The position numbers and the translations under genes were made by a program. This document shows positions 3 to 14,969 of a DNA stretch of 64,000 nucleotides, in pieces. The stretch covers positions 248,001 through 312,000 of IMG/VR virus record IMGVR_UViG_3300043418_000114, one strand, 5' to 3'. Every line of letters begins with the position of its first letter. Position 1 is the first letter of the stretch. The notes beneath the pieces were generated by a model that worked only from the letters and a program-made list of their open reading frames with translations, was not told where the DNA came from and searched no databases.

Positions 3-362
3 CGTACCAGTTGGGAAAACATCAGTAGAGATTGGCTAAGTCGTTGGCCTGATATTCCATTCTTGGCAACAGTAAATGTAGGCAATGAAAAGATATTGTA
101 TTATGAGATTCTTGGCATGCAACGATATACTGACAGATTGCCACTAGATGATCCATTCAGACAAAATCAAAAGTCATTCTACTTGCATCCCAAATTAGTC
201 AAAGAAATGTACACGTGGCAATATGCATGGTATACCACTAACTATGTTGGATTTCAACGTGAAGAAATGGACATGGATGTTGAAGTCAAGAAACAAATTG
301 AAGACTACTGGGCTAAAGGATATTGGCTTGGCAAGGGCAACACTGACAGGACAACAGTATGA
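3..362 (+). CDS. hypothetical protein, 5'-truncated by the window edge; first visible gene of the fabF operon
   Basis: Frame 3 is open from position 3 (RTSWENISRDWLSRWPDIPFLATV...), so the track start at 63 is probably internal. The stop overlaps the next start (ATGA). Confidence 0.7.
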   Translation, partial: RTSWENISRDWLSRWPDIPFLATVNVGNEKILYYEILGMQRYTDRLPLDDPFRQNQKSFYLHPKLVKEMYTWQYAWYTTNYVGFQREEMDMDVEVKKQIEDYWAKGYWLGKGNTDRTTV

Positions 363-1561
363 CAGACATAGCCATTATTGGAGTAGGTATTGTTGACAGT
401 TTAGGTTTCAACAAAGACGAATGCTGGAACAACATGCTCAACGGTGTTGTTGGACTAAGCCCTAATGTTCTATTCAATAGAGAACAATATCCTATATCAA
501 AAATCAATAGTGTTCATAGCGTAGACTTGAACAAGATAACACTTGCCGAGTTCACTGACAAAGAAAGACAGAATATGGATCGCATCTTTTTGCTTTCCAT
601 GCATTCAATATTAGACTGTATCAAAGACAGTAATGTTACATCCACTGATGTTTCAATGATTGTAGGCATGACTAGTTCTATGAAGAATTTAGAACTAGAA
701 TCTTGGAACAGATTACTCAATAATAAACGCACTGCGCCTAGACAAATGTACTTTGCAATGCGTGATACTATCACATCGACAATCACTCGAATGTTTGGGT
801 ATACGGGTGCAACAAGTACCATGAGTAACATGTGTACTACATCTATAAGTTCGTTAGATTATGCTGTGCGTTTGTTAAACGACAACGACTGTGCATATTC
901 ATTAGTCACTGGAGTAGATTCGTTCGTACACCCTCTTGACATGTATGTTATGCAATCAATGGGTGCAACATGCATTGACGAAAATCCATTAACCAAACCA
1001 TTTGACGAGAATCGTAATGGTATCACATTAGGTGAAGGCAGTTGTTCATTCATGCTAACCACCTTAGCTAATGCTAAAAATAACAATCATAAAATCTATG
1101 GCATTATTAAGGGAATAGGTCACGGTACTGAATCTGTGCATGAAACTGACATGAGTACAGATGGTATTGGTTCACGCAATGCTATCAACATGGCACTAAG
1201 AAAAGCAAACTTGTCCAGTGCCGATATTGGATACGTTAATTGTCATGCAACAGGAACACCTCAAGGAGATACTGTCGAATATGATATTGTCAGTAGCATG
1301 TTCCCAAACGTAACAGTAGGTGCAAACAAATCAAATATCGGACACACCATGGGTGCGTGTGGTATGCTTGAGTTGTTCTACACGATCATGGCGTTGAATC
1401 GTCAGGTAGCACCACCTATCGCTAATTTAATTACCCCTATAGGTCATTCAATAAATATCCCAATGACCATGCAAACAATTGACACTATGTATGCCCTAAA
1501 GAATTCTTTTGGCTTTGGTGGCAAAAGTAGTTGCGTTGTCATTGAACGGGGAACATTATGA
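359..1561 (+). CDS. fabF: beta-ketoacyl-ACP synthase (FabF/FabB-like ketosynthase)
   Basis: N-terminal IAIIGVGIV, catalytic Cys (SNMCTTS), KPFDENRNGITLGEG, His (YVNCHATGTPQGD), His (KSNIGHTMGACG) and C-terminal KNSFGFGG. The Cys-His-His triad is intact. Confidence 0.93.
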   Translation: MTDIAIIGVGIVDSLGFNKDECWNNMLNGVVGLSPNVLFNREQYPISKINSVHSVDLNKITLAEFTDKERQNMDRIFLLSMHSILDCIKDSNVTSTDVSMIVGMTSSMKNLELESWNRLLNNKRTAPRQMYFAMRDTITSTITRMFGYTGATSTMSNMCTTSISSLDYAVRLLNDNDCAYSLVTGVDSFVHPLDMYVMQSMGATCIDENPLTKPFDENRNGITLGEGSCSFMLTTLANAKNNNHKIYGIIKGIGHGTESVHETDMSTDGIGSRNAINMALRKANLSSADIGYVNCHATGTPQGDTVEYDIVSSMFPNVTVGANKSNIGHTMGACGMLELFYTIMALNRQVAPPIANLITPIGHSINIPMTMQTIDTMYALKNSFGFGGKSSCVVIERGTL

Positions 1562-2337
1562 AGTTAGCAATGGTTTCAGCACATACAGTTGACTTTTACC
1601 ATTTTTTCAAAATTCAATATGCAATGATGCAGATGTATGACCCATTGGTTAAAATCACTGTAGCAAAGAGTGATACATTCGAGCAGTTCAATGAGAAGGT
1701 TGATTGGGTAGATTTAGGATATCCTGATTTCTTGCATCCAATGCATCGTAACTATACAACCAAATTCAACTTTGCACGTGCTCCGTTGGCACAATCAGTA
1801 GATGCAGACCGAGTAGCATGGGTAGATGCAGATATATTGCCTCTAGTTCCAACCGCTATTAGCAACTTCATGACTGTAAGTGACAAGCCCACAGTAGCAC
1901 ACAATGTATACATGAGCGATGAACAATATGATGGGTGGAATAGTCTTACTGAATGGTATGGAGTTGGTAAGTTACCATGTTATAATTGCGGATTGGTTGC
2001 GGCTAATCGTGATGATAGTTTTTGGAATGAATGGGCAGATGCTAAAAAGATGCTGTACCTAAGTAGACTCGATTACTTCTTAACGTATGAGGGTGATTAT
2101 CATTATGGAATCCCACTCAGAATGTTCTTCATTGACCAAATAGCACTTAATTATGTTATCAACAAAGATGTGAGTAGATTCCACTGTGTTGATAGTAGTA
2201 ATAACTGGCAACCACTTGATCCAAATGGCAACATGTTTAAAGACACAATCAGAATGCCATTCGATACAAAGATATTACATCTAAGTGGACCATCAAAGAA
2301 AAGTCTTTTAATAAACAAGGAAACAATAAATGTATAA
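1558..2337 (+). CDS. GT-A fold glycosyltransferase, GT8-like
   Basis: DxD motif (WVDADIL), YNCGLV (cf. YFNSGV), DQIALNYV (cf. DQDILN) and ILHLSG (cf. IIHFTG). Confidence 0.75.
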   Translation: MKLAMVSAHTVDFYHFFKIQYAMMQMYDPLVKITVAKSDTFEQFNEKVDWVDLGYPDFLHPMHRNYTTKFNFARAPLAQSVDADRVAWVDADILPLVPTAISNFMTVSDKPTVAHNVYMSDEQYDGWNSLTEWYGVGKLPCYNCGLVAANRDDSFWNEWADAKKMLYLSRLDYFLTYEGDYHYGIPLRMFFIDQIALNYVINKDVSRFHCVDSSNNWQPLDPNGNMFKDTIRMPFDTKILHLSGPSKKSLLINKETINV

Positions 2338-3094
2338 ACCATTTGATTTAACAGGTAAAGTAGTTGCTGTAGTGGGCGGCAATCAAGGCATTGGCTTTGG
2401 AGTAGCCGAAGCATTAGCACAAGCAGGAGCTACCGTTGTTATCGGTGGACGCAGAACAGAATGGAATCAAAAAGCCGCTGAGAAAATTGGTGGTGATTAT
2501 ATTGACGTTGATGCCACTGTAGAAGAATCAGTTGTCAACTATATGAATACTGTAGTTGAGCGTCATGGCAGATTAGATGCTTGTTTCGCTATCTTGGGTG
2601 GTGCAACAATTAGTCCTGCCCCATTCGACTTAACCCCGCTTGAATGGTGGGAGAATGATATTCAAAAGAATCTAACTAGTGTATACTTGTGTTTCCGTGA
2701 AGCATCTAATCACATGATTAAGCTAGGAAACGGCGGGTCATTGGTTAGTATTGCATCTATTACATCAATTGGATCTAGTGCATATATTAGTGCATATGCA
2801 AGTGCTAAAGCAGGATTGATTGGATTGACTAATTCATTGTGTCGCAAGCTAGGAGAGTACAAGATTCGTATCAATAGCATCATGTCGGGCGTTATTGACA
2901 CAAAAGAATCACATGCTAACTTACCTGAACAGTTTAGACAACACATGATTAACCACTCAGTGTTTAATCGTCTAGGTGCAGTAGAAGACTTTGGTGGGCT
3001 TGCTGTGTATCTAGCTAGTGATGCATCATCATATCATACCGCTGATGTTATGTTACTCGACGGTGGACAAACAAAGACAATCATGGTAGTATGA
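2330..3094 (+). CDS. short-chain dehydrogenase/reductase (FabG-like)
   Basis: Rossmann motif VVGGNQGIG, catalytic Ser (IASITS), YxxxK (YASAK), IRINSI and C-terminal DGG. Confidence 0.92.
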   Translation: MYKPFDLTGKVVAVVGGNQGIGFGVAEALAQAGATVVIGGRRTEWNQKAAEKIGGDYIDVDATVEESVVNYMNTVVERHGRLDACFAILGGATISPAPFDLTPLEWWENDIQKNLTSVYLCFREASNHMIKLGNGGSLVSIASITSIGSSAYISAYASAKAGLIGLTNSLCRKLGEYKIRINSIMSGVIDTKESHANLPEQFRQHMINHSVFNRLGAVEDFGGLAVYLASDASSYHTADVMLLDGGQTKTIMVV

Positions 3095-4032
3095 CATTAG
3101 AACCTACTGTTTGGTATGCTGGTCGCAACAACTATAAGAAGCATACGTATGAACCTGACTACTTTGGGCCAAAGATGGGAAGATTCACTACTGAGTTACT
3201 TGATGTTGAGACCAGAGACTTAACCAATATCCATGATATCATCGCTGATGACTTAGGAATAAGACAAACCAAAACTGTCGAGGTCTTATTCAGTGGCGGT
3301 ATGGATAGCGAATGTGTAATTCGCAGTTGCCTACACAGTAAGATTCCAGTTCGTGCATTGACTGCTAGATTCATGGTTCGTGGCTATCCAGTCAATACAC
3401 ATGACTTGTATTACGCTGAGAAATTTTGCAGAGAACACAACGTAGAGCAAGTGTTTGTTGACTTGGATGCAGTTACTTTCTTTGAGAGTGGCAAGTTCGC
3501 TGATTATATTGTGCCTTACAACATTTGGTATCCGCATGTCGCAGTACACTTTTGGATATTCGAACAAGCTACTGGATTCCCTGTATTAGGTGGAGAGTAT
3601 AGTTGGCCATGGGCGACTGAAAAGATTATAAGCCCTCATAGAATTCCATTCATGTCATACGATAGATTCATGCATGACCGAGGTATACACGGGATTGGCA
3701 GTATGCTAGGCAATAGTCTAGAAAGTAACTGTTTATTCATTAAGAATCATCTACAAATCGTCCGTAGTGCGCCAGCAGGGTATTACAGAGGAGAAGATGA
3801 TAAGATAACCATACTCAAGCAAGTATTGTACAAGCAAATGGGGTTTGGTGACTTAGAATTGCGTATGAAAAACTACGGATGGGATATGGTAGGCAAAGAC
3901 ATATTTGATTTATGGAAATACTGCGGGGATGTAGTTGATCAATACGGTGAATCCAAGGCAGTCATTAAATGGGGCAATTTTATTGCCGAAGCAATGAATG
4001 GTGCACCAGGAAGTAATGACAGACACATATGA
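3091..4032 (+). CDS. PP-loop (adenine nucleotide alpha-hydrolase-like) protein
   Basis: VLFSGGMDSE matches the SGGxDS PP-loop. DLYYAEKFC resembles the helix that follows in this superfamily. Confidence 0.6.
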   Translation: MTLEPTVWYAGRNNYKKHTYEPDYFGPKMGRFTTELLDVETRDLTNIHDIIADDLGIRQTKTVEVLFSGGMDSECVIRSCLHSKIPVRALTARFMVRGYPVNTHDLYYAEKFCREHNVEQVFVDLDAVTFFESGKFADYIVPYNIWYPHVAVHFWIFEQATGFPVLGGEYSWPWATEKIISPHRIPFMSYDRFMHDRGIHGIGSMLGNSLESNCLFIKNHLQIVRSAPAGYYRGEDDKITILKQVLYKQMGFGDLELRMKNYGWDMVGKDIFDLWKYCGDVVDQYGESKAVIKWGNFIAEAMNGAPGSNDRHI

Positions 4033-4562
4033 ACTACGATGCATTCAGTCATGGTCAGATGAAAAGCAAGTTATGGCTTGCTGAAAAACTCGAACCATAC
4101 CTTATAAACGAAAATATCGTAGTATTGGGTAGTTGGTATAATGTTACTGCATTGGTGTTAAAGTGTCGAAACTACAATGGCAAGATATACGGCATAGATA
4201 TAGACCCTGAAGTTAAATCAATTGCAGATAAGATTTGTAGTCAATGGGTTATAGAAGGCTCAGTTGAAAATATTACAGGTGATGCTAATAATATCACAGT
4301 ACCATATGATACCATTATTAACTGTAGTAGTGAGCATATGACTACTGAGTGGTTTGATGCGATTAAACCAGGGACACTCGTTTGTATTCAGTCTAGTGAT
4401 GTGACTGATCCTGAGTATCCCTGGTTAATTAAAACTGCTAGTGCCGATATAGAATCGTTCAAGCAAAAATATAACCTGTCAAAAGCCCTTTTCTGCGACA
4501 CACTGAGAATTCAGTACGGCGATTGGGGCTATGACAGGTTTATGTTAATTGGCGTTAAATAG
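4029..4562 (+). CDS. class I SAM-dependent methyltransferase-like protein
   Basis: Motif I-like VVLGSWY, acidic strand end GIDIDP, GDAN and IINCSSEHM. Confidence 0.65.
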   Translation: MNYDAFSHGQMKSKLWLAEKLEPYLINENIVVLGSWYNVTALVLKCRNYNGKIYGIDIDPEVKSIADKICSQWVIEGSVENITGDANNITVPYDTIINCSSEHMTTEWFDAIKPGTLVCIQSSDVTDPEYPWLIKTASADIESFKQKYNLSKALFCDTLRIQYGDWGYDRFMLIGVK

Positions 4563-4683
4563 CTTCGTAGTCTTCTTTACCAACGCCACATTCTGGACAG
4601 AGAAAATCTGCTGGCAATTCATCCCACTTGCCTTCTGTTTCTTCATCGTGGACATGTCCACAAACTACACATACGTGTTCCAT
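4555..4683 (-). CDS. rubredoxin, 42 aa (not in the ORF track)
   Basis: My translation is MEHVCVVCGHVHDEETEGKWDELPADFLCPECGVGKEDYEAI*. It has two CxxCG motifs and W..LP..F.CP.CG, and starts 1 nt after the rubrerythrin stop. Confidence 0.92.
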   Translation of the reverse strand: MEHVCVVCGHVHDEETEGKWDELPADFLCPECGVGKEDYEAI

Positions 4684-4684
4684 A

Positions 4685-5137
4685 TTACAATCCCTCCAAT
4701 ACTTTTTGATATGCTTCTGCGTGGCGCTTTTCTACTTTTGCAAGTGCCGCAAAACGCTTTTCTGCTTTCTGCAATACTTCTTTGAATTGGGCCGCATGTT
4801 CTTTTGATTCTTCAATCTGATGACGAGCTTCTTCTGCCGCGGCAATATTGCCTTCGAATTCTGCTTTCTCTTTGAATTCAGGATACATGACTTCAAACTC
4901 ATGTGTCTCGCCTTCAATCGCCATTTCTAAACAAGTGTGAGTGTCAGGCTTGCCAACTAACAATTCTAAATGTCCCCACGCATGTAGTAATTCTTGATCC
5001 GCGGTATGCTCGAAGTGTTTTGCAACATCCTCATAGCCTTCTTCTCGTGCGATTTTTGCAAAGTAACGATACTTTGTATGTGCTTGACTTTCACCCGCAA
5101 AAGCGGCTTGTAAATTCAATAGTGTCTCTGATGACAT
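4685..5137 (-). CDS. rbr: rubrerythrin (ferritin-like diiron domain, no fused rubredoxin)
   Basis: NLQAAFAGESQA, QELLHA (ExxH), GETHE..MYP and ESKEH / VEKRH. Strong SD AAGGAG upstream. Confidence 0.92.
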   Translation of the reverse strand: MSSETLLNLQAAFAGESQAHTKYRYFAKIAREEGYEDVAKHFEHTADQELLHAWGHLELLVGKPDTHTCLEMAIEGETHEFEVMYPEFKEKAEFEGNIAAAEEARHQIEESKEHAAQFKEVLQKAEKRFAALAKVEKRHAEAYQKVLEGL

Positions 5138-5148
5138 AGTTTTCTCCT

Positions 5149-5451
5149 TTAAATATCTTCTGTTGGCGTTAAACCATTACTGTGTTTGTCTGTAGTCTTC
5201 TCTACATCTTGAAACAATCGTTTCTCTTGTGCGGTGCGCTCTTTAAAAATTTTACGAGGATTACCACAAAGCATACATCCAGGTTGACCACAATCCATTG
5301 CGTGATGTTTTGCCAAACGATGAGGCTCTTTTACTGCTTTGTCTTTGTTAGTAAGACCGTGTGCTTTTGCAATCTTAACTTGCTTCTTCACAGCAGTTTC
5401 GTCACGAAAGCGACGACGACTATTCAAATATTTTGCTAACTCATTACTCAT
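5149..5451 (-). CDS. hypothetical basic protein with His/Cys cluster
   Basis: ORF contiguous with its neighbours; contains HHAMDCGQPGCMLCGNPRK. Confidence 0.7.
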   Translation of the reverse strand: MSNELAKYLNSRRRFRDETAVKKQVKIAKAHGLTNKDKAVKEPHRLAKHHAMDCGQPGCMLCGNPRKIFKERTAQEKRLFQDVEKTTDKHSNGLTPTEDI

Positions 5452-6026
5452 AACATTATGTCCTTATCGTTATCCTCTTTTACTAACCAACCTAACTTAA
5501 ACAAATCATTGCGTATCTCGTCGGTTACTACACTCTCTGAAACAACCGCTTTTGACTGTAGATAGTATTCTTGCTGTTCTTTAGTCATTTGCCTAAATTG
5601 ATCATCATCTACATCTTTTGCATCCCTGATGCCAGAACAGTACCAGTCGATGTAGTCACCCTTTTGTTGCATGTTAGCTATGATGCCACCAGCACTTCGC
5701 CAACTTGCACTCCATGTTTTGTCAGTCAATATAGGCCAAACATCATTCTTAATGAATTCGTTGTTGCATATTGCCGCATATAAATGCTGTGCATATACAT
5801 CGTCTGCACGTACTTTGTCAAGAATCCATTGCGTAGTTCTCAAATCGTATTCCATGTTGTCTGTTTGCCATTCAACTGTTGATTCAAGTTCTGCTCTACG
5901 TTGGTCCCATGTCTTGAAATAGTCAATCCTCTCCTGAGCTTCCTCAGCAGATGTTGTTCCTTCTTCAACACGTTTAAGTTCACAGTCAATGTTGAATTGA
6001 CCACGTGCTGGACTCTTGCTTAACAT
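5448..6026 (-). CDS. hypothetical protein
   Basis: 192-aa ORF packed between metK and the next gene (1-nt gap on one side, ATGA overlap on the other). Confidence 0.75.
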   Translation of the reverse strand: MLSKSPARGQFNIDCELKRVEEGTTSAEEAQERIDYFKTWDQRRAELESTVEWQTDNMEYDLRTTQWILDKVRADDVYAQHLYAAICNNEFIKNDVWPILTDKTWSASWRSAGGIIANMQQKGDYIDWYCSGIRDAKDVDDDQFRQMTKEQQEYYLQSKAVVSESVVTDEIRNDLFKLGWLVKEDNDKDIML

Positions 6027-6027
6027 A

Positions 6028-7128
6028 TTAGAATAAATCTACCTTCTCCCACGGTAAATCTTTCTTGCCAAAGTGACCGTAGTTAGTTGTACGACCGTAG
6101 ATTGGTTTGAACAAATCAAACCGCTCAATGATGCCTTTTGGTGTCAAGTCTACATTGTCTTGTACCCACTTAGTTAAGTCTCGTGCTTGTTTAGCATCGG
6201 CAGTTTCAATGTAGAAACTCATTGGATCTTTCATACCAATAGCATAACTGACTTGACATGTTGCCCAGTTAGCACGACCTGTTGCTACAATGTTCTTAGC
6301 AATATAGCGCATCATGTACGCCGCCGAGCGGTCAACTTTCGTAGGATCTTTACCACTAAATGCACCACCGCCATGGGGACTATAGCCACCATAAGTATCA
6401 ACAATGATTTTTCTTCCGGTGAGTCCAGTGTCACCATCAGGACCACCAATAACAAAACGCCCAGTAGGATTAATGTAATACTCAGTATCATTGTCTAGAT
6501 ATTGTGGTGGTAAAATTGCACGAATAACTTCTTTTACCGCTAAACGTAAAGAATTGATTTCAGTGTCTTCGGTGTGTTGAGTAGAACATACAACTTTAGC
6601 GATGCGTTTTGGTGTGCCATCGTCGTTATATTCAAACGTTACTTGACTCTTGGCATCTGGTCCTAGGCATGTCATTGTGCCATTCTTTCGAAGTCTTGTT
6701 AATTCTTCAACAATACGATGTGACCAGTAGATTGCACTTGGCATGTAATTGTCTGTCTCGTTACATGCGTAGCCAAACATTAGACCTTGATCACCTGCAC
6801 CAAAGTTATCAGTGCCCAACGCAATGTCTGCACTCTGACCATGTAGTAAATTGGTCACTTGAACAGTTCGCCAATTAAAGCCTTTTTGTTCGTAACCAAT
6901 ATTCTTAATCACTTTACGTACAGCGGCGTCGACCTCTACATCATGTAGAATGCCTTTATATTCGCCTGCCAACACGACTCGATTAGTAGTAACAAGAGTC
7001 TCACATGCACAACGTAGTGCAGAGTCTTCCTTTGACATTACTAAATCCAAAATTGCATCAGATATGGCATCTGCCACTTTATCTGGATGTCCTTCACTAA
7101 CACTCTCACTTGTAAACAAATAACTCAT
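6028..7128 (-). CDS. metK: S-adenosylmethionine synthetase
   Basis: FTSESVSEGHPDK, GAGDQG, GRFVIGGP.GDTGLTGRKIIVDTYGG and GGGAFSGKD. Confidence 0.98.
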   Translation of the reverse strand: MSYLFTSESVSEGHPDKVADAISDAILDLVMSKEDSALRCACETLVTTNRVVLAGEYKGILHDVEVDAAVRKVIKNIGYEQKGFNWRTVQVTNLLHGQSADIALGTDNFGAGDQGLMFGYACNETDNYMPSAIYWSHRIVEELTRLRKNGTMTCLGPDAKSQVTFEYNDDGTPKRIAKVVCSTQHTEDTEINSLRLAVKEVIRAILPPQYLDNDTEYYINPTGRFVIGGPDGDTGLTGRKIIVDTYGGYSPHGGGAFSGKDPTKVDRSAAYMMRYIAKNIVATGRANWATCQVSYAIGMKDPMSFYIETADAKQARDLTKWVQDNVDLTPKGIIERFDLFKPIYGRTTNYGHFGKKDLPWEKVDLF

Positions 7129-7173: not shown

Positions 7174-7746
7174 TTATTTCAACTTTTTCGGCTTAGTTTT
7201 CTTGGGAGCTATACGTTTTACTTTACTGTAAAACACGTGATTGCCGATAGTAGCAACGTGATAATATGGCCAAATAGGATTAACGCTTGTATTATGAAAA
7301 AACAACGTTGAATTTGGAACAACATCCACATAACGATTGTTTACCATAACATCATACGCTACCTGTTTTGCTTGCTGATATCGTTGGTTGTTGACTGGTT
7401 CTCCTTTGCCTTCGCATACCCAACTAAACTGACAAATTATCTTGTCTTGTATAGTTGTTCTTTGGTATACCACTTGACATGGATTACTTCCAAAACCGTG
7501 ACGTACTCTGTTCAATACTACTCTCGCAACTGCGGCTTGACCATCGATTGATTCATGACCAGCTTCGTAGTATATGTTCTTTGCCATACATGCAATTTGT
7601 TTTGCATCTATTTTAGTCAAAGAAATCTGTGCTTGTTCGCCGTAATTGTTAGCTGGAGGAGCATTTACTTTGCTCGTTCCTAGTAAACATATTACTGCAA
7701 TTAAACCCAAAAATAACATCTTGGGTAGGTTACTCAGTATTTGCAT
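7174..7746 (-). CDS. SleB/Hydrolase_2-family cell wall hydrolase with N-terminal hydrophobic segment
   Basis: CMAKNIYYEA (catalytic Glu), VVLNRV, QFSW and IGNHVFY. I moved the start to ATG 7746 because GAAAGGA lies just upstream. Confidence 0.88.
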   Translation of the reverse strand: MQILSNLPKMLFLGLIAVICLLGTSKVNAPPANNYGEQAQISLTKIDAKQIACMAKNIYYEAGHESIDGQAAVARVVLNRVRHGFGSNPCQVVYQRTTIQDKIICQFSWVCEGKGEPVNNQRYQQAKQVAYDVMVNNRYVDVVPNSTLFFHNTSVNPIWPYYHVATIGNHVFYSKVKRIAPKKTKPKKLK

Positions 7747-7805
7747 ACTTTTCCTTTCTACCATAGCATTATACTATGGCTTATTGATAAACCAAAGTAT
7801 ATTGG

Positions 7806-11547: not shown

Positions 11548-12648
11548 TTAAATGTTTGGTAGTGAGTCATAGTCTAATGAATCACTCATTACACCAATGA
11601 CGTAGTTTGTACTTTCGTTTTCCTGTAACGCAGTTTGTTTCTTGCTAGTATCGCTATGCTTGTTAAACCATGGGATAGGAGTAGACTTTGGTGCAGGGGC
11701 TAAGTATTTAATGCCGATATCGTGTAGTGCACCTTTTGCTGTGTAGTCTACAAAATCTTTCAATACTGTTGCATTCAATCCAATAACTGGACCCATCTTG
11801 AATAGATAATCTGCCCATGCTTTTTCTTCACGGATAACGTCCATGTACAATGCATAGACTTCTTCACGGCATTCTTCTGCTACCCTAGCGAATCGAGGAT
11901 CTTCCTTGACAACTTGATTGATAATCCAAGCTGTCCAACCCTTGTGTAGCAATTCATCTTGTAGAATCAAACTGATAATGTTACCATTGCCAATGAAGAT
12001 TTTGTTTTCTACCATTGCTAAACTTGTAGCAAAGCTAACCATGAAGCGGAATGCTTCTAGTGCATAGCTTGCATGTAGAGCCATCCAAATTGCTTTGATG
12101 TGTTCGTGTTCAGTGATAACTTCACCAATCTCTTTGCGGCAATTAATACGATGTAGTGTGTCATAGTACATGCCGACACTAGATGCCATACTCACAATAG
12201 GCTGAGTATCATGGATAGTATTAAACACTTCCTTTGGCACATTGTAGATGTTACGAATGATGTGACTGTAACTGCGAGAGTGAATGTTAGTCTCAAAGAA
12301 CGACCAGTTACTCATTAATGCTTCTACTTCTGGAATAGAACACACTGGTGTAAACACTTGTGCTGGTGCGCGACCTTGTAAACTATCTAACGCAGTTTGG
12401 CGCAACACGTTACTTGTGAAAATATGTTTGACTGCATCCGATGCGTCTTTAAAGTCGCCAGCGTCTTTAGTTAGTGATACTTCTTCAGGGACCCAAAAGA
12501 AGCCACGTGCAGTCTGTTCATAATCTGCAATCTTTTTGTACTTTACTTCTTCGAATCGTTGAATAGTAACTGGACCTGCTGGGTCAAGAAACATTTTGCG
12601 AGATAGGTAGTCGGTAGGTGTGTTTAAGTTATATTGTTGTTTACTCAT
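11548..12648 (-). CDS. nrdB: ribonucleotide reductase class Ia beta subunit
   Basis: FWVPEEV, QTALDSLQGR (Asp ligand), ETNIHSRSY (radical Tyr), EAFRF and DELLH. Confidence 0.97.
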   Translation of the reverse strand: MSKQQYNLNTPTDYLSRKMFLDPAGPVTIQRFEEVKYKKIADYEQTARGFFWVPEEVSLTKDAGDFKDASDAVKHIFTSNVLRQTALDSLQGRAPAQVFTPVCSIPEVEALMSNWSFFETNIHSRSYSHIIRNIYNVPKEVFNTIHDTQPIVSMASSVGMYYDTLHRINCRKEIGEVITEHEHIKAIWMALHASYALEAFRFMVSFATSLAMVENKIFIGNGNIISLILQDELLHKGWTAWIINQVVKEDPRFARVAEECREEVYALYMDVIREEKAWADYLFKMGPVIGLNATVLKDFVDYTAKGALHDIGIKYLAPAPKSTPIPWFNKHSDTSKKQTALQENESTNYVIGVMSDSLDYDSLPNI

Positions 12649-14969
12649 AATTTACATGCTTCACATGAATCTTCGTCATCAAAGTCAATAACTTCCAATG
12701 GACCTGATGTTGTTTCGTCTTGTTGCTTGCTACCAGCTTTGTTAATCAAGCTATAATAAAAGGTCTTAATTCCCCACATGTGTGACTGCATCAAGTTCTT
12801 AGCAATTAGTGTGGTAGGTACTTTTCTGTCAGGGAAGTGAGCAGGGTTATAGAATGTGTTGGTTGAAATAGATTGATCAACATATGCTTGAATAACTGCA
12901 CTAGTCTTTAGATATGCTTCACAATCTGTTTGTTCCCACATTAATTGATAATTCTTGCGAACCTTTGGATTGTGGTACTCAGGCACAACCTGAATGAATG
13001 AACCAGCTTTTGATTCTTTAACAGTAATCAAACTCATTGGCATTTCGATGCCATTAGTTGAGTTGATAGCAACGGAGCTAGATTCTACAGGAGCAACCGC
13101 GCCATTGGTAGCATTACGAACGCCATATTGAATCATGTCTTTACGTAGTGGTTCCCAATCAAGTTCAGGAGTAAAGTCTGTAAGTTCGTTAACGCCGTTA
13201 GCACGTAATTCCCATGGGAATTTACCTTGACCATAACGTGTCTTGTCGCTATGCAAACATGCACCACGTTCTTTAGCTAGCTCAACACTTGATTCAGTGA
13301 GATAGAACATTTGATGTTCCATCCATGACTTGACTTCTGCTAATGCGTCTTTGTCGCCATACTTCATTCCGCGTTTGGCATGCCAGTACGCTAAGTTAGT
13401 AATACCAACTCCAATAGGACGAATTTCTTCATTACTCAAACGAGATTGGACAGAGAGAAAATCTTGATAATCCAAAATGTTGTTAAGAGAACGGTGAAGT
13501 ATACGACAAGCACGGCGCATATCTTCAGGGTTACGGAACGCACCCCAGTTAATCGATCCCAAAGTACATAGAGCAATGCGACCATTGTCATCATCGAGGC
13601 GCTTAAAAGACTTAGTAGGTAATAAAATTTCACAGCAAAGGTTACTCTGGTAAATGGTATGGTATTCGGGGTCAAACGGACCTTGGTTCATAACGTTGTC
13701 TATGAATACCAAATAGATACGTCCAGTGTCTGTGCGCTCTTTGAGAATGCCTCCCTTGAAGACTTCCTCTGCCGCCATTACTTTCTTGCGAAGGTTTTTA
13801 TTTTTTTCATACTTAACATATAGTTCTTCGAACAACGCTGTATTGCTGTAGAACGCTTCGTAGAGGTCGGGAACTTCATTAGGGTCAAAGAAGGTAATAT
13901 TCTCTTTATTCTTGAATCGTCTCCAAAAGAATGCAGAAAGCACCACACCGTAATCCATGAAGCGGACTCTCGTTTCGTCAGTTCCTTGGTTGTTTTTGAG
14001 AACAATAAGGTCATCGAATTGAAGATGCCAGATGGGATAGAAAACCGTAGCAGAAGCATTTCTGATTCCTCCTTGTGAACAACTACGCAAATCACCGAAC
14101 CACTTCTTTAAGAAGGGAATCATGCCAGTGTGTTGAATTTCGCCGCCACGAATCGGTGAACCCAGTGAACGTAGACGACCAATCTCTAAGCCGATGCCAG
14201 CACGTTTGCTAGCATACTTAGCCATCATTTCTCCGGATGCAAATATGCTATCCAAATCATCGTCACTACGGATAAGAACACATGAGCTAAACTGTTTAGT
14301 TGGAGTACCCAAGCCAGCCAGAACAGGAGTAGCAAGAGTAAATAAACCGTCACTCGCACAGTTATAGTAATCTTTGATGTATCGCATACGAGCAGAATTA
14401 GGTTCTTCTTTATGGAAGACAGTTGCCGCGGCAACCATGTAGCGAACTTGTGGAGTTTCATAAGTTTGTTTTGTTGAGCGGTTGCGAACTAGGTATTTTT
14501 CAATCAATTGCTCGATTGCCGCATATGAATATGCTTCGTCCTTTTCATGGTCGATAAACGCATCCATTTTGTCCCAGTCTTCTTTTGTGTACCACTGTAG
14601 TAGTTCATCAGTGTATAGACCAGAGGCAACGTTCTTTACCACGATATCGTATAAGCTAGGTGGTACATAATCACCATATACGTCTTTGCGTAACATGCTT
14701 AGGCGCTGTTTTCCTGCAACGTACTGGTAGTTAGTATGCCCAACGTCTGGATTTGATTCCACGTCGATTAAATCGACAATAGCACGTAATGTAATGCTAT
14801 CAATCTCTTGCGTAGTAATGCCATCGTAAAAGTGTGGATTACTACGAATCTCAATCATTGACGGACTAACGTCAGCTATTCCTGCACAAATTTTTGCCAC
14901 TTGTGCTTGCCATTTTTCTAAATTTAATGGCTCCTTCTTACCGCTTCTCTTGGTAACGTTAATAATCAT
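12645..14969 (-). CDS. nrdA: ribonucleotide reductase class Ia alpha subunit with ATP cone
   Basis: VTKRSGKKE ATP cone, SSCVLI, QSNLCCEI, LCTLG, KTFYY and C-terminal CEAC. No intron or intein seen. Confidence 0.98.
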   Translation of the reverse strand: MIINVTKRSGKKEPLNLEKWQAQVAKICAGIADVSPSMIEIRSNPHFYDGITTQEIDSITLRAIVDLIDVESNPDVGHTNYQYVAGKQRLSMLRKDVYGDYVPPSLYDIVVKNVASGLYTDELLQWYTKEDWDKMDAFIDHEKDEAYSYAAIEQLIEKYLVRNRSTKQTYETPQVRYMVAAATVFHKEEPNSARMRYIKDYYNCASDGLFTLATPVLAGLGTPTKQFSSCVLIRSDDDLDSIFASGEMMAKYASKRAGIGLEIGRLRSLGSPIRGGEIQHTGMIPFLKKWFGDLRSCSQGGIRNASATVFYPIWHLQFDDLIVLKNNQGTDETRVRFMDYGVVLSAFFWRRFKNKENITFFDPNEVPDLYEAFYSNTALFEELYVKYEKNKNLRKKVMAAEEVFKGGILKERTDTGRIYLVFIDNVMNQGPFDPEYHTIYQSNLCCEILLPTKSFKRLDDDNGRIALCTLGSINWGAFRNPEDMRRACRILHRSLNNILDYQDFLSVQSRLSNEEIRPIGVGITNLAYWHAKRGMKYGDKDALAEVKSWMEHQMFYLTESSVELAKERGACLHSDKTRYGQGKFPWELRANGVNELTDFTPELDWEPLRKDMIQYGVRNATNGAVAPVESSSVAINSTNGIEMPMSLITVKESKAGSFIQVVPEYHNPKVRKNYQLMWEQTDCEAYLKTSAVIQAYVDQSISTNTFYNPAHFPDRKVPTTLIAKNLMQSHMWGIKTFYYSLINKAGSKQQDETTSGPLEVIDFDDEDSCEACKL

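What the first reader, a model, noticed from the sequence alone, without database searches (positions are those of the whole stretch)
4555..5137. Hidden 42-aa rubredoxin completes a two-gene rubrerythrin/rubredoxin module
The ORF track misses a minus-strand gene at 4555-4683 with a clear rubredoxin signature (CVVCG...CPECG). It starts 1 nt after the rubrerythrin stop (TAA-T-ATG) and overlaps the convergent methyltransferase stop by 8 nt. The rubrerythrin lacks its own rubredoxin domain, so the phage seems to carry both the diiron peroxidase and its electron donor. That could protect Fe-dependent enzymes such as NrdB from peroxide during infection (inference).
Basis: partly seen in the sequence, partly recalled or inferred. 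Interest (0 to 1): 0.6.

Follow-up and report, generated by a model that had tools for sequence, protein, structure and literature searches.

The report
Jumbo-phage rubrerythrin plus mini-rubredoxin gene pair
A 364-kb freshwater phage carries a real, conserved 42-residue rubredoxin gene directly behind a rubrerythrin gene: two thirds of a bacterial three-gene peroxide-detoxifying operon, without the reductase, so the pair probably runs on the host's enzyme.

Summary
ORF 4555-4683(-) encodes a 42-aa rubredoxin (Pfam PF00301, 36.5 bits, cut-off 23). It starts 1 nt after the stop of a 150-aa one-domain rubrerythrin (4685-5137). It overlaps a convergent ORF by 8 nt.

The gene is real. All 77 related viral contigs with enough downstream DNA have it behind rubrerythrin. 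All four Cys are invariant. Median dN/dS is about 0.2. A Shine-Dalgarno lies in the last rubrerythrin codons in 47 of 48 distinct upstream sequences, and stop and start overlap or nearly touch.

It is not "hidden" elsewhere: public gene callers already name relatives "rubredoxin".

New here: the closest cellular relatives (58-66% identity, mostly Betaproteobacteria) form an operon of rbr, a full-length 54-aa rubredoxin and a NorW-like NADH:rubredoxin reductase, often beside an OxyR-like regulator. The phages kept only rbr and rub. They shortened the rubredoxin loop by 9-12 residues, fused the gene junction and have no reductase.

Best reading: a host-derived peroxide-reducing module that depends on a host reductase. 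The link to NrdB protection is untested. This is a new variant of a known system, of moderate interest.

The parts
4555..4683 (-). Mini-rubredoxin gene (42 aa plus stop). The predicted Fe ligands are Cys5, Cys8, Cys29 and Cys32, in CVVCG and CPECG knuckles 20 residues apart.
   Evidence: Pfam PF00301 scores 36.5 bits against a 23-bit cut-off. The best solved relative is P. aeruginosa rubredoxin 2 (2v3b_B, E 3.6e-10), with two gaps totalling 9 residues in the loop. The AF2 model has pLDDT 94.7, and every top fold match is a rubredoxin, TMq 0.77-0.85, including the 45-aa 6rxn. The gene is present in 77 of 77 relatives and the Cys are invariant in 57 distinct sequences. Pooled pN/pS is 0.36 and median dN/dS is 0.22.
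4685..5137 (-). One-domain rubrerythrin gene (150 aa plus stop). Conserved diiron residues are E16, E49/H52, E77/E80 and E110/H114. Residues about 130-150 form a subfamily-specific C-terminal helical extension with a second E136-x-x-H139 motif.
   Evidence: Pfam PF02915 scores 65.8 bits. The AF2 model has pLDDT 94.5 and four helices, the last spanning 98-149. VIA-align gives Z 14.4 and rmsd 1.6 over model residues 1-129 against 4di0 residues 5-140. Foldseek gives TM 0.75-0.82 to domain-swapped rubrerythrins and sulerythrin.
4681..4687 (-). Gene junction TAA-T-ATG: the rubrerythrin stop, one base, then the rubredoxin start.
   Evidence: Read from the sequence. Among 76 scored loci (75 relatives plus this window) the junction is TAATG (overlap of 1 nt) in 52, ATGA (overlap of 4 nt) in 14, +1 nt in 6 (this window among them) and +10 nt with an added GGAG in 4. 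In bacterial operons the gap is 5-264 nt.
4692..4697 (-). Shine-Dalgarno GGAGGG for the rubredoxin gene, embedded in the last rubrerythrin codons, 8 nt upstream of the ATG.
   Evidence: Read from the sequence. GGAG, GAGG or AGGA is found upstream of the start in 47 of 48 distinct upstream sequences of relatives.
5144..5149 (-). Shine-Dalgarno AAGGAG upstream of the rubrerythrin ATG (5137-5135).
   Evidence: Read from the sequence.
4555..4562 (.). The 8-nt overlap of the rubredoxin 3' end with the convergent ORF 4029-4562(+). That ORF is 177 aa, with sub-threshold methyltransferase similarity only.
5149..6026 (-). Two co-oriented upstream ORFs: a 100-aa ORF (phrog_4499, unknown function) and a 192-aa ORF. 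They precede the pair in about a third of relatives. Rbr-Rd is the end of a long minus-strand gene string running from 10166 to 4555.
   Evidence: tblastn finds them upstream and co-oriented in 24-25 of 80 loci. A single 1247-nt, 100%-identical contig from a metatranscriptome library covers 4421-5667.

Best explanation
The two genes are a phage-borne, host-derived peroxide-reducing module.

- The 150-aa one-domain rubrerythrin is the diiron peroxidase.
- The 42-aa protein is its Fe(Cys)4 rubredoxin electron donor.
- The two are made together by translational coupling.

The pair descends from a bacterial operon, rbr - rubredoxin - NADH:rubredoxin reductase, seen mainly in Betaproteobacteria and often OxyR-linked. 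A lineage of large freshwater phages kept only the first two genes. It deleted 9-12 residues of the rubredoxin loop and fused the gene junction.

Because the phage has no reductase, the mini-rubredoxin must be reduced by a host enzyme. The most likely one is the host's own NorW-like rubredoxin reductase. The expected net effect is extra H2O2 removal in the infected cell.

Shown here: gene reality, family membership, conservation, coupling signals, bacterial operon context and absence of a phage reductase.

Inferred: iron binding, electron flow, peroxidase activity, the betaproteobacterial host and any benefit to the phage.
For: Family and fold
- Pfam hits are above threshold for both proteins.
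- Both AF2 models have pLDDT of about 94-95. They match rubredoxins and one-domain or domain-swapped rubrerythrins.

Reality of the small gene
- It is present in 77 of 77 relatives.
- The Cys are invariant.
- Median dN/dS is about 0.22, with synonymous sites near saturation.
- A Shine-Dalgarno is present in 47 of 48 distinct upstream sequences.
- Stop and start overlap or nearly touch in all scored loci.
- Public gene callers name relatives 'rubredoxin'.

Origin and function
- More than 599 bacterial relatives exist. Among the 80 best, excluding the probably misbinned phage contig L085, identity is 56-66%. Most are Burkholderiales and other Betaproteobacteria, with a few Moraxellaceae.
- Of those 80 loci, 76 have a rubredoxin directly downstream. 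All 75 bacterial ones have the canonical 29-residue spacing.
- At least 65 of 80 then have a NorW-like reductase of about 385-394 aa.
- 22 of 80 have an OxyR-like regulator upstream, divergent in most.
- Phage rubrerythrins form one side of a branch with 100% support against the bacterial ones.
- Module GC is 42%, matching the phage (41%) and not the bacterial loci (59%).

No phage reductase
- The only Pyr_redox_2 hits in the genome are an FMO-like monooxygenase and a D-amino-acid-dehydrogenase-like protein.
- tblastn with two bacterial reductases finds nothing in the genome or in 80 phage loci.
- It also finds nothing in five large related records, two of them at least 98% complete.

RNA
- A 100%-identical 1247-nt contig spanning both genes is in a metatranscriptome library from a different sample and study.
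Against: - There is no biochemical evidence. Iron (rather than zinc) binding, redox activity and peroxidase activity are all inferred.
- The canonical bridging Glu of helix D aligns to an invariant Ser111, with an invariant Glu110 one position earlier. The diiron site may therefore differ from characterised rubrerythrins.
- The loop deletion, and the His that replaces the aromatic residue after the first knuckle, could impair recognition by a host reductase.
- The RNA-library contig cannot show strand, and DNA carry-over is not excluded.
- The host is inferred only from similarity of this module.
- The tree is unrooted, so the direction of transfer is not proven.
- An OxyR-like neighbour is seen in only 22 of 80 bacterial loci.
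Confidence: 0.7

Rival explanations
1. Split rubrerythrin. The mini-rubredoxin is not a diffusible carrier but an obligate, stoichiometric subunit. It docks on the rubrerythrin, perhaps on the subfamily-specific C-terminal helix 130-150, and so recreates the two-domain architecture of classical rubrerythrins. An external host donor then reduces the complex.
For: - 150 + 42 = 192 residues, close to classical two-domain rubrerythrins (1b71 is 191 aa).
- Tight translational coupling favours equimolar synthesis.
- The C-terminal extension lies where classical rubrerythrins continue into their rubredoxin-like domain.
- The small protein also hits Pfam RUBY_RBDX weakly (23.3 bits, below the 26.5 cut-off).
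Against: - The small protein scores clearly better as a true rubredoxin than as the rubrerythrin C-terminal domain.
- It descends from a free-standing 54-aa rubredoxin that sits next to its own reductase in bacteria.
- No fused form was seen among the longer relatives inspected.
- The complex prediction gave no answer either way.
Confidence: 0.2
2. The pair does a different redox job. One option is that the rubrerythrin-like protein, with its altered helix-D site, is an oxidase, oxygenase or iron-handling protein. Another is that the rubredoxin mainly feeds another phage iron enzyme, for example by keeping the NrdB diiron cofactor reduced.
For: - Ser111 replaces the canonical bridging Glu, and a second ExxH motif lies in the extension.
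- The best solved relative of the small protein is the alkane-hydroxylase-system rubredoxin of P. aeruginosa.
- NrdA and NrdB are encoded 6.4-10 kb away on the same strand.
Against: - Six of seven diiron ligands are in register, and the fold matches peroxidase-type rubrerythrins.
- OxyR-like regulators adjoin the bacterial operon in 22 of 80 loci.
- The pair stays together in both phages and bacteria. The neighbouring genes change: the downstream KAS/SDR block and MetK are absent from the flanks of all 80 relatives.
Confidence: 0.08
3. The small ORF encodes a zinc ribbon or a non-functional remnant, kept only as a by-product of neighbouring constraints such as the overlap with the convergent gene.
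For: It is very short. It has lost 9 loop residues and two core aromatic residues relative to the operon rubredoxins. Weak zinc-ribbon Pfam hits also appear.
Against: - Purifying selection acts over the whole ORF.
- The CxxCG...CPxCGxxKxxY signature is invariant in 57 distinct sequences.
- A Shine-Dalgarno is conserved.
- In relatives the ORF lies in other contexts, without the convergent overlap seen here.
- A natural 45-aa rubredoxin with a similar loop deletion has been solved (6rxn).
Confidence: 0.03

Closest known systems
Betaproteobacterial rbr - rubredoxin - NADH:rubredoxin reductase operon (e.g. loci in Polynucleobacter, Limnohabitans, Aquabacterium, Rhodoferax, Sideroxydans)
   Same: The 150-aa rubrerythrin subfamily is the same: 56-66% identity, the same Glu110/Ser111 site and the same C-terminal extension. 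The gene order is also the same, with rubredoxin directly behind rubrerythrin.
   Different: - The bacterial rubredoxin is full length (mostly 54-56 aa, 29 residues between the knuckles, an aromatic residue after CxxCG).
- The bacterial genes are 5-264 nt apart.
- A NorW-like reductase follows, and an OxyR-like regulator is often nearby.
- The phage has a 42-aa rubredoxin (20 or 17 residues between the knuckles, CxxCGH), an overlapping or abutting junction, no reductase and no regulator.
- I found no paper characterising this bacterial operon.
Classical rubrerythrin / rubredoxin / NROR peroxide-reduction chain of anaerobes (D. vulgaris 1ryt/1b71, P. furiosus 1nnq, C. difficile 9fj2)
   Same: The diiron helical domain with E, ExxH and ExxE motifs is shared, and so is rubredoxin as the proximal electron donor. 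The predicted fold matches the domain-swapped forms (TM 0.78-0.82).
   Different: Classical forms carry their own C-terminal rubredoxin-like domain, which the phage protein lacks. The helix-D Glu is shifted by one residue, and there is a 20-residue helical extension.
One-domain ('aerobic-type') rubrerythrins: B. pseudomallei 4di0/8fxd and sulerythrin 1j30 (Cardenas et al. 2016, PMC5114695)
   Same: These are the best structural matches (Z 14.2-14.4, rmsd 1.6-2.0). They have no rubredoxin domain.
   Different: That group is reported to co-localise with DUF3501 and an Fe-S oxidoreductase, not with rubredoxin. The phage genome has no DUF3501. The phage subfamily has a shorter B-C loop and a longer C-terminus.
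Short rubredoxin of Desulfovibrio desulfuricans (6rxn, 45 aa)
   Same: It is a natural rubredoxin with a deletion in the same loop. It matches in both fold and sequence (E 8e-7; TMt 0.73).
   Different: It belongs to an independent lineage. The phage protein is shorter still (42 aa; some relatives have only 17 residues between the knuckles), and it is tied to a rubrerythrin gene.
Rubrerythrin genes in deposited phage genomes (e.g. Pelagibacter phage Mosig)
   Same: It is a phage-encoded one-domain rubrerythrin (38.5% identity).
   Different: No rubredoxin gene is annotated next to it. Of 50,697 phage records, 7 match the rubrerythrin and 4 match the rubredoxin, and no record is on both lists.

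Membership tests
Rubredoxin (Pfam PF00301) | Score above the curated family threshold | tested here: met
   It scores 36.5 bits against a 23-bit cut-off, E 5e-9, covering profile positions 2-46 of 47. The NCBIfam equivalog RubredRD gives 36.5 bits, below its 90-bit cut-off, as expected for a shortened protein.
Rubredoxin (Pfam PF00301) | Two Cys knuckles, CxxCG and CPxCG, supplying four Fe ligands | tested here: met
   C5, C8, C29 and C32 are invariant in 57 distinct phage sequences and in 21 database relatives.
Rubredoxin (Pfam PF00301) | Canonical spacing of about 29 residues between the knuckles, and the aromatic core | tested here: not met
   The spacing is 20 residues here and 17 in a second phage variant. 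It is 29 in all 75 bacterial operon rubredoxins. W20, F27 and Y39 are kept, but the positions after the first knuckle are His. The 45-aa rubredoxin 6rxn is a solved precedent for such a deletion.
Rubredoxin (Pfam PF00301) | Rubredoxin fold | tested here: met
   The AF2 model has pLDDT 94.7. All top PDB fold matches are rubredoxins, TMq 0.77-0.85. Foldseek E-values are only about 2e-3 because the protein is so small.
Rubredoxin (Pfam PF00301) | Binds one iron and cycles between Fe(II) and Fe(III) | not testable with these tools
   This needs purified protein, spectroscopy and metal analysis.
Rubrerythrin (Pfam PF02915) | Score above the family threshold and the helical ferritin-like fold | tested here: met
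   It scores 65.8 bits against 22.8. VIA-align gives Z 14.4 and rmsd 1.6 over 127 residues to 4di0.
Rubrerythrin (Pfam PF02915) | Seven diiron ligands: E, ExxH, ExxE, ExxH | tested here: inconclusive
   E16, E49, H52, E77, E80 and H114 are invariant and in register. The last Glu aligns to an invariant Ser111, with an invariant Glu110 next to it. A second, canonical-looking E136xxH139 lies in the C-terminal extension.
Rubrerythrin (Pfam PF02915) | C-terminal rubredoxin-like domain (classical form) | tested here: not met
   The protein ends at residue 150 in a helix with no Cys motif. This is the one-domain type.
Rubrerythrin (Pfam PF02915) | Peroxidase activity | not testable with these tools
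   This needs an enzyme assay.
Complete NAD(P)H - reductase - rubredoxin - rubrerythrin chain | An own NAD(P)H:rubredoxin oxidoreductase | tested here: not met
   No homologue was found in the 364-kb genome, in 80 related loci or in five large related records. It is present in at least 65 of 80 bacterial loci.
'Aerobic-type' rubrerythrin gene cluster (Cardenas 2016) | Co-localisation with DUF3501 and an Fe-S oxidoreductase | tested here: not met
   There is no DUF3501 in the genome. The neighbour is a rubredoxin instead.

The most novel reading that the evidence does not exclude
The phage and betaproteobacterial 150-aa proteins are a distinct 'split' rubrerythrin class. In it, the C-terminal helix with the second ExxH motif docks a separate rubredoxin subunit. 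The phages have pushed this to a minimal obligate heteromer, with the shortest natural rubredoxin known, which plugs into the host's reductase to reprogramme peroxide defence during jumbo-phage infection.
Probability: 0.2. Interest if true: 0.55.

Novelty: new variant of a known kind. Interest (0 to 1): 0.4.

Why it matters
- It adds a well-supported oxidative-stress auxiliary module to large freshwater phages. At least 137 viral contigs carry the rubrerythrin, several of them 200-520 kb.
- It is a clean example of how a phage trims a host operon: it keeps the catalytic protein and its small carrier, drops the reductase and regulator, shortens the carrier and couples translation.
- The 42-aa protein (17-20 residues between the knuckles) is a natural minimal rubredoxin. 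That could interest people who design small iron-sulfur redox proteins.
- The similarity to the betaproteobacterial operon gives a testable host prediction.
- The chemistry itself (rubredoxin to rubrerythrin to H2O2) is long known, so a specialist would not be very surprised.

Tried and rejected
- **Complex prediction.** Rubrerythrin with rubredoxin returned 'no answer', with a score of 0.01 against a mark of 0.32. I do not use it as evidence either way.
- **PHROGs.** No family matched either protein.
- **Megablast.** The region against deposited phage genomes gave no match.
- **Fused forms.** The longer database relatives (P0040, P0047, P0008, P0130, P0204) turned out to be upstream start miscalls, a partial duplication or C-terminal tails. 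None is a fusion.
- **A phage rubredoxin reductase.** The two Pyr_redox_2 hits are an FMO/Baeyer-Villiger-like monooxygenase and a D-amino-acid-dehydrogenase-like protein. tblastn and genome searches with bacterial reductases found nothing.
- **DUF3501 partner.** It is absent.
- **Rubredoxin serving the convergent KAS/SDR/monooxygenase block.** I rejected this because the block is absent from the flanks of all 80 relatives, which still keep the pair.
- **C-terminal motif.** My first reading was that E136xxH139 is the true helix-D ligand pair after a 25-residue insertion. I dropped it once structural alignment put residues 1-129 onto the whole of 4di0 and profile alignments to P. furiosus rubrerythrin and sulerythrin were colinear.
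- **Literature.** Searches found no paper linking rubrerythrin or rubredoxin with jumbo or huge phages. They also found none on the betaproteobacterial operon.
- **Searches not run.** The large representative protein search was not needed.
Full report
**1. Where the window lies**

The window is bases 248,001-312,000 of a 364,247-bp viral record with direct terminal repeats, estimated 100% complete. This is a jumbo phage. Near-identical DNA occurs in freshwater metagenomes.

**2. The observation**

The minus strand carries a 150-aa ORF (4685-5137) and a 42-aa ORF (4555-4683). The 42-aa ORF reads MEHVCVVCGH...CPECGVGKEDYEAI.

- The junction is TAA-T-ATG.
- The small ORF overlaps the convergent ORF 4029-4562 by 8 nt.
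- A GGAGGG lies 8 nt upstream of the small ORF's ATG, inside the last rubrerythrin codons.

All stated coordinates are right. The "methyltransferase" label of the convergent ORF rests on sub-threshold hits only (E 0.04-0.09).

**3. What the two proteins are**

*The small protein.*
- It passes the Pfam Rubredoxin threshold (36.5 bits against 23). It scores lower on the rubrerythrin C-terminal domain model, RUBY_RBDX (23.3 bits, below its 26.5 cut-off).
- Its best solved relative is P. aeruginosa rubredoxin 2 (E 3.6e-10). The alignment shows two gaps, 9 residues in all, in the loop between the Cys knuckles.
- The AF2 model has pLDDT 94.7. Its best fold matches are all rubredoxins (TMq 0.77-0.85), including the naturally short 45-aa rubredoxin 6rxn.

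*The large protein.*
- It passes the Pfam Rubrerythrin threshold (65.8 bits).
- It is predicted as four helices, the last spanning residues 98-149 (pLDDT 94.5).
- Residues 1-129 superpose on the whole one-domain rubrerythrin of B. pseudomallei (Z 14.4, rmsd 1.6) and on sulerythrin.
- It has no rubredoxin-like domain.

Each family occurs once in the genome.

**4. Is the small gene real?**

A scan of viral contigs found 137 relatives of the rubrerythrin. The 80 best are 70-80% identical, and several lie on contigs of 200-520 kb.

- Three of the 80 loci are cut off within 70 nt of the rubrerythrin end. All 77 others carry the small ORF behind rubrerythrin.
- In two loci a further small hydrophobic ORF is inserted between the two genes.
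- Junction types among 76 scored loci (75 relatives plus this window): TAATG overlap in 52, ATGA overlap in 14, +1 nt in 6, and +10 nt with an added GGAG in 4.
- A Shine-Dalgarno core lies upstream of the start in 47 of 48 distinct upstream sequences.
- The motif C-x2-C-G-H...C-P-E-C-G-x-x-K-x-x-Y is invariant in 57 distinct sequences.
- Synonymous sites are near saturation (pS 0.73) while pN is 0.27. Median dN/dS is 0.22, and third codon positions vary most.
- Public gene callers already call relatives of 42-47 aa and name them "rubredoxin". The gene is hidden only from an ORF list with a length cut-off.
- A metatranscriptome library from another sample and study holds a 1247-nt contig, identical to window 4421-5667, that spans both genes. 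This shows presence in an RNA library. It does not prove transcription or show the strand.

**5. Where the pair comes from**

A scan of one genome per prokaryotic species found at least 599 relatives. The best 80 match over the full 150 residues. One of them (L085) is treated separately below. The other 79 are 56-66% identical. Nearly all are Betaproteobacteria (Limnohabitans, Polynucleobacter, Rhodoferax, Polaromonas, Aquabacterium, Sideroxydans/Gallionellaceae, Aromatoleum, Zoogloea), with a few Moraxellaceae and other Gammaproteobacteria.

- In 76 of these 80 loci a rubredoxin gene follows rubrerythrin.
- In the 75 bacterial ones it has the canonical 29-residue spacing and is mostly 54-56 aa. 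The intergenic gap is 5-264 nt.
- At least 65 of 80 loci then have a 382-394-aa protein that best matches NADH:(flavo)rubredoxin reductase NorW (E 1e-88 to 1e-104).
- In 22 of 80 an OxyR-like regulator lies upstream, divergent in most.

This is a complete NADH-to-peroxide electron chain with a peroxide-type regulator. It is the strongest contextual evidence for function.

In a maximum-likelihood tree, the 62 phage-type rubrerythrins form one side of a branch with 100% support against the 79 bacterial ones (quick search, unrooted).

The one "bacterial" locus with a phage-type 42-aa rubredoxin is L085, binned as an Aquiluna MAG. It has 41% GC and falls inside the phage group, so it is probably a misbinned phage contig.

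The module's GC (42%) equals that of the phage (41%) and not that of the bacterial loci (59%). The acquisition is therefore old.

**6. What the phages changed**

- *No reductase.* The only Pyr_redox_2 hits in the genome are a flavin monooxygenase-like protein and a D-amino-acid-dehydrogenase-like protein. tblastn with two bacterial reductases finds nothing in the genome or in the 80 loci. It also finds nothing in five large related records, two of them 98-100% complete.
- *No regulator.*
- *A shorter rubredoxin.* The knuckles are 20 residues apart in 56 loci and 17 in 20 loci, never 29. His replaces the aromatic residue after the first knuckle.
- *A fused junction.* The stop and start overlap or abut.

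The pair moves as a unit. Only 24-26 of 80 relatives share the upstream genes of this window. None shares MetK or the downstream KAS/SDR block. No fused rubrerythrin-rubredoxin was seen.

**7. Mechanism proposed**

A host NADH:rubredoxin reductase reduces the phage mini-rubredoxin. The mini-rubredoxin reduces the diiron site of the phage rubrerythrin, which reduces H2O2 to water. Coupled translation gives matched amounts of the two proteins.

The steps after [quoted passage not shown] are inferred from the established biochemistry of rubredoxin/rubrerythrin systems in anaerobes. That biochemistry is my own knowledge, and the family names are confirmed.

A betaproteobacterial host is inferred from similarity alone.

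**8. Open points**

- Profile alignments to P. furiosus rubrerythrin and sulerythrin are colinear. They put the canonical bridging Glu of helix D on an invariant Ser111, with an invariant Glu110 one residue before it.
- Residues 130-150 extend the last helix beyond the end of the solved one-domain proteins. They carry a second, canonical-looking V-E136-K-R-H139-A-x-A-Y143 motif.
- Both features are shared with the bacterial operon proteins.
- They may mark a docking site for the separate rubredoxin, or an altered metal site. The complex prediction gave no answer.

**9. Comparison with what is known**

The chemistry and both families are long known. One-domain rubrerythrins have been described, but in association with DUF3501 and an Fe-S oxidoreductase (PMC5114695). 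The phage genome has no DUF3501.

Deposited phage genomes rarely have either gene. Of 50,697 records, 7 match the rubrerythrin and 4 match the rubredoxin, and no record is on both lists. Pelagibacter phage Mosig has a rubrerythrin with no rubredoxin annotated beside it. PHROGs has no family for either protein.

I found no paper on this pair in phages or on the betaproteobacterial operon. A few vibriophage papers mention a "rubredoxin-type fold protein" as an auxiliary gene, without a rubrerythrin.

**10. Verdict**

- This is a new variant of a known system: two of three genes, a miniaturised carrier and a fused junction. It is widespread in metagenomic phage contigs and already auto-annotated there.
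- Interest is moderate.

Noticed in passing
window 359-4562 (+), plus G000:C1:246312-246920 just upstream of the window (L082:1489-2907): A co-oriented block that may be a small biosynthetic cluster. It holds a beta-ketoacyl synthase-like gene (359-1561), an SDR/enoyl-ACP-reductase-like gene (2330-3094) and an FMO/Baeyer-Villiger-like flavin monooxygenase (472 aa). It also has three ORFs with no family hit. None of it appears in the flanks of the 80 related loci.
   Followed up: partly
window 6028-7128 (-): A full-length S-adenosylmethionine synthetase (MetK) gene. It sits inside a gene string (orf786 - cell-wall hydrolase - orf192 - orf100 - Rbr - Rd) that 23-26 relatives share without MetK, so it looks like an insertion specific to this phage.
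   Followed up: partly
window 4685-5137 (-), residues 110-114 and 130-150: The rubrerythrin subfamily (phage and betaproteobacterial) has an invariant Ser where the canonical bridging Glu of helix D aligns, with an invariant Glu one residue earlier. It also has a 20-residue C-terminal helical extension with a second ExxHAxxY motif that resembles helix D of other rubrerythrins. This is unexplained.
   Followed up: partly
L085 (contig CAZKLA010000025.1, labelled an uncultured Aquiluna MAG): This 20-kb contig has 41% GC, a phage-type 42-aa rubredoxin with a TAATG junction, and a rubrerythrin that falls inside the phage group. It is probably a phage contig binned into an actinobacterial MAG.
   Followed up: partly
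L046:4445-4620 and L048 (related viral contigs): A hydrophobic ORF of about 58 aa is inserted between rubrerythrin and rubredoxin. All three genes overlap by 1-4 nt.
   Followed up: no
protein P0008 (227 aa, from a 973-bp contig): A rubrerythrin relative with a partial duplication of the N-terminal half in front of a complete copy.
   Followed up: no
window 11548-14969 (-) and 7174-7764 (-): Ribonucleotide reductase small and large subunits of the NrdB/NrdA type, the large one with an ATP cone. There is also a SleB-like cell-wall hydrolase (Hydrolase_2).
   Followed up: no
G000:C1:136458-137636 (L083:1492-2670): A 392-aa D-amino-acid-dehydrogenase-like FAD enzyme encoded by the phage. It scores 465 bits on NCBIfam PRK12409, just under the 494-bit cut-off.
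   Followed up: no
window 5149-5451 (-): The 100-aa ORF directly upstream of rubrerythrin matches phrog_4499 (unknown function, E 1.8e-11). It contains a CGQPGCMLCG motif. It precedes the pair in 25 of 80 relatives.
   Followed up: no
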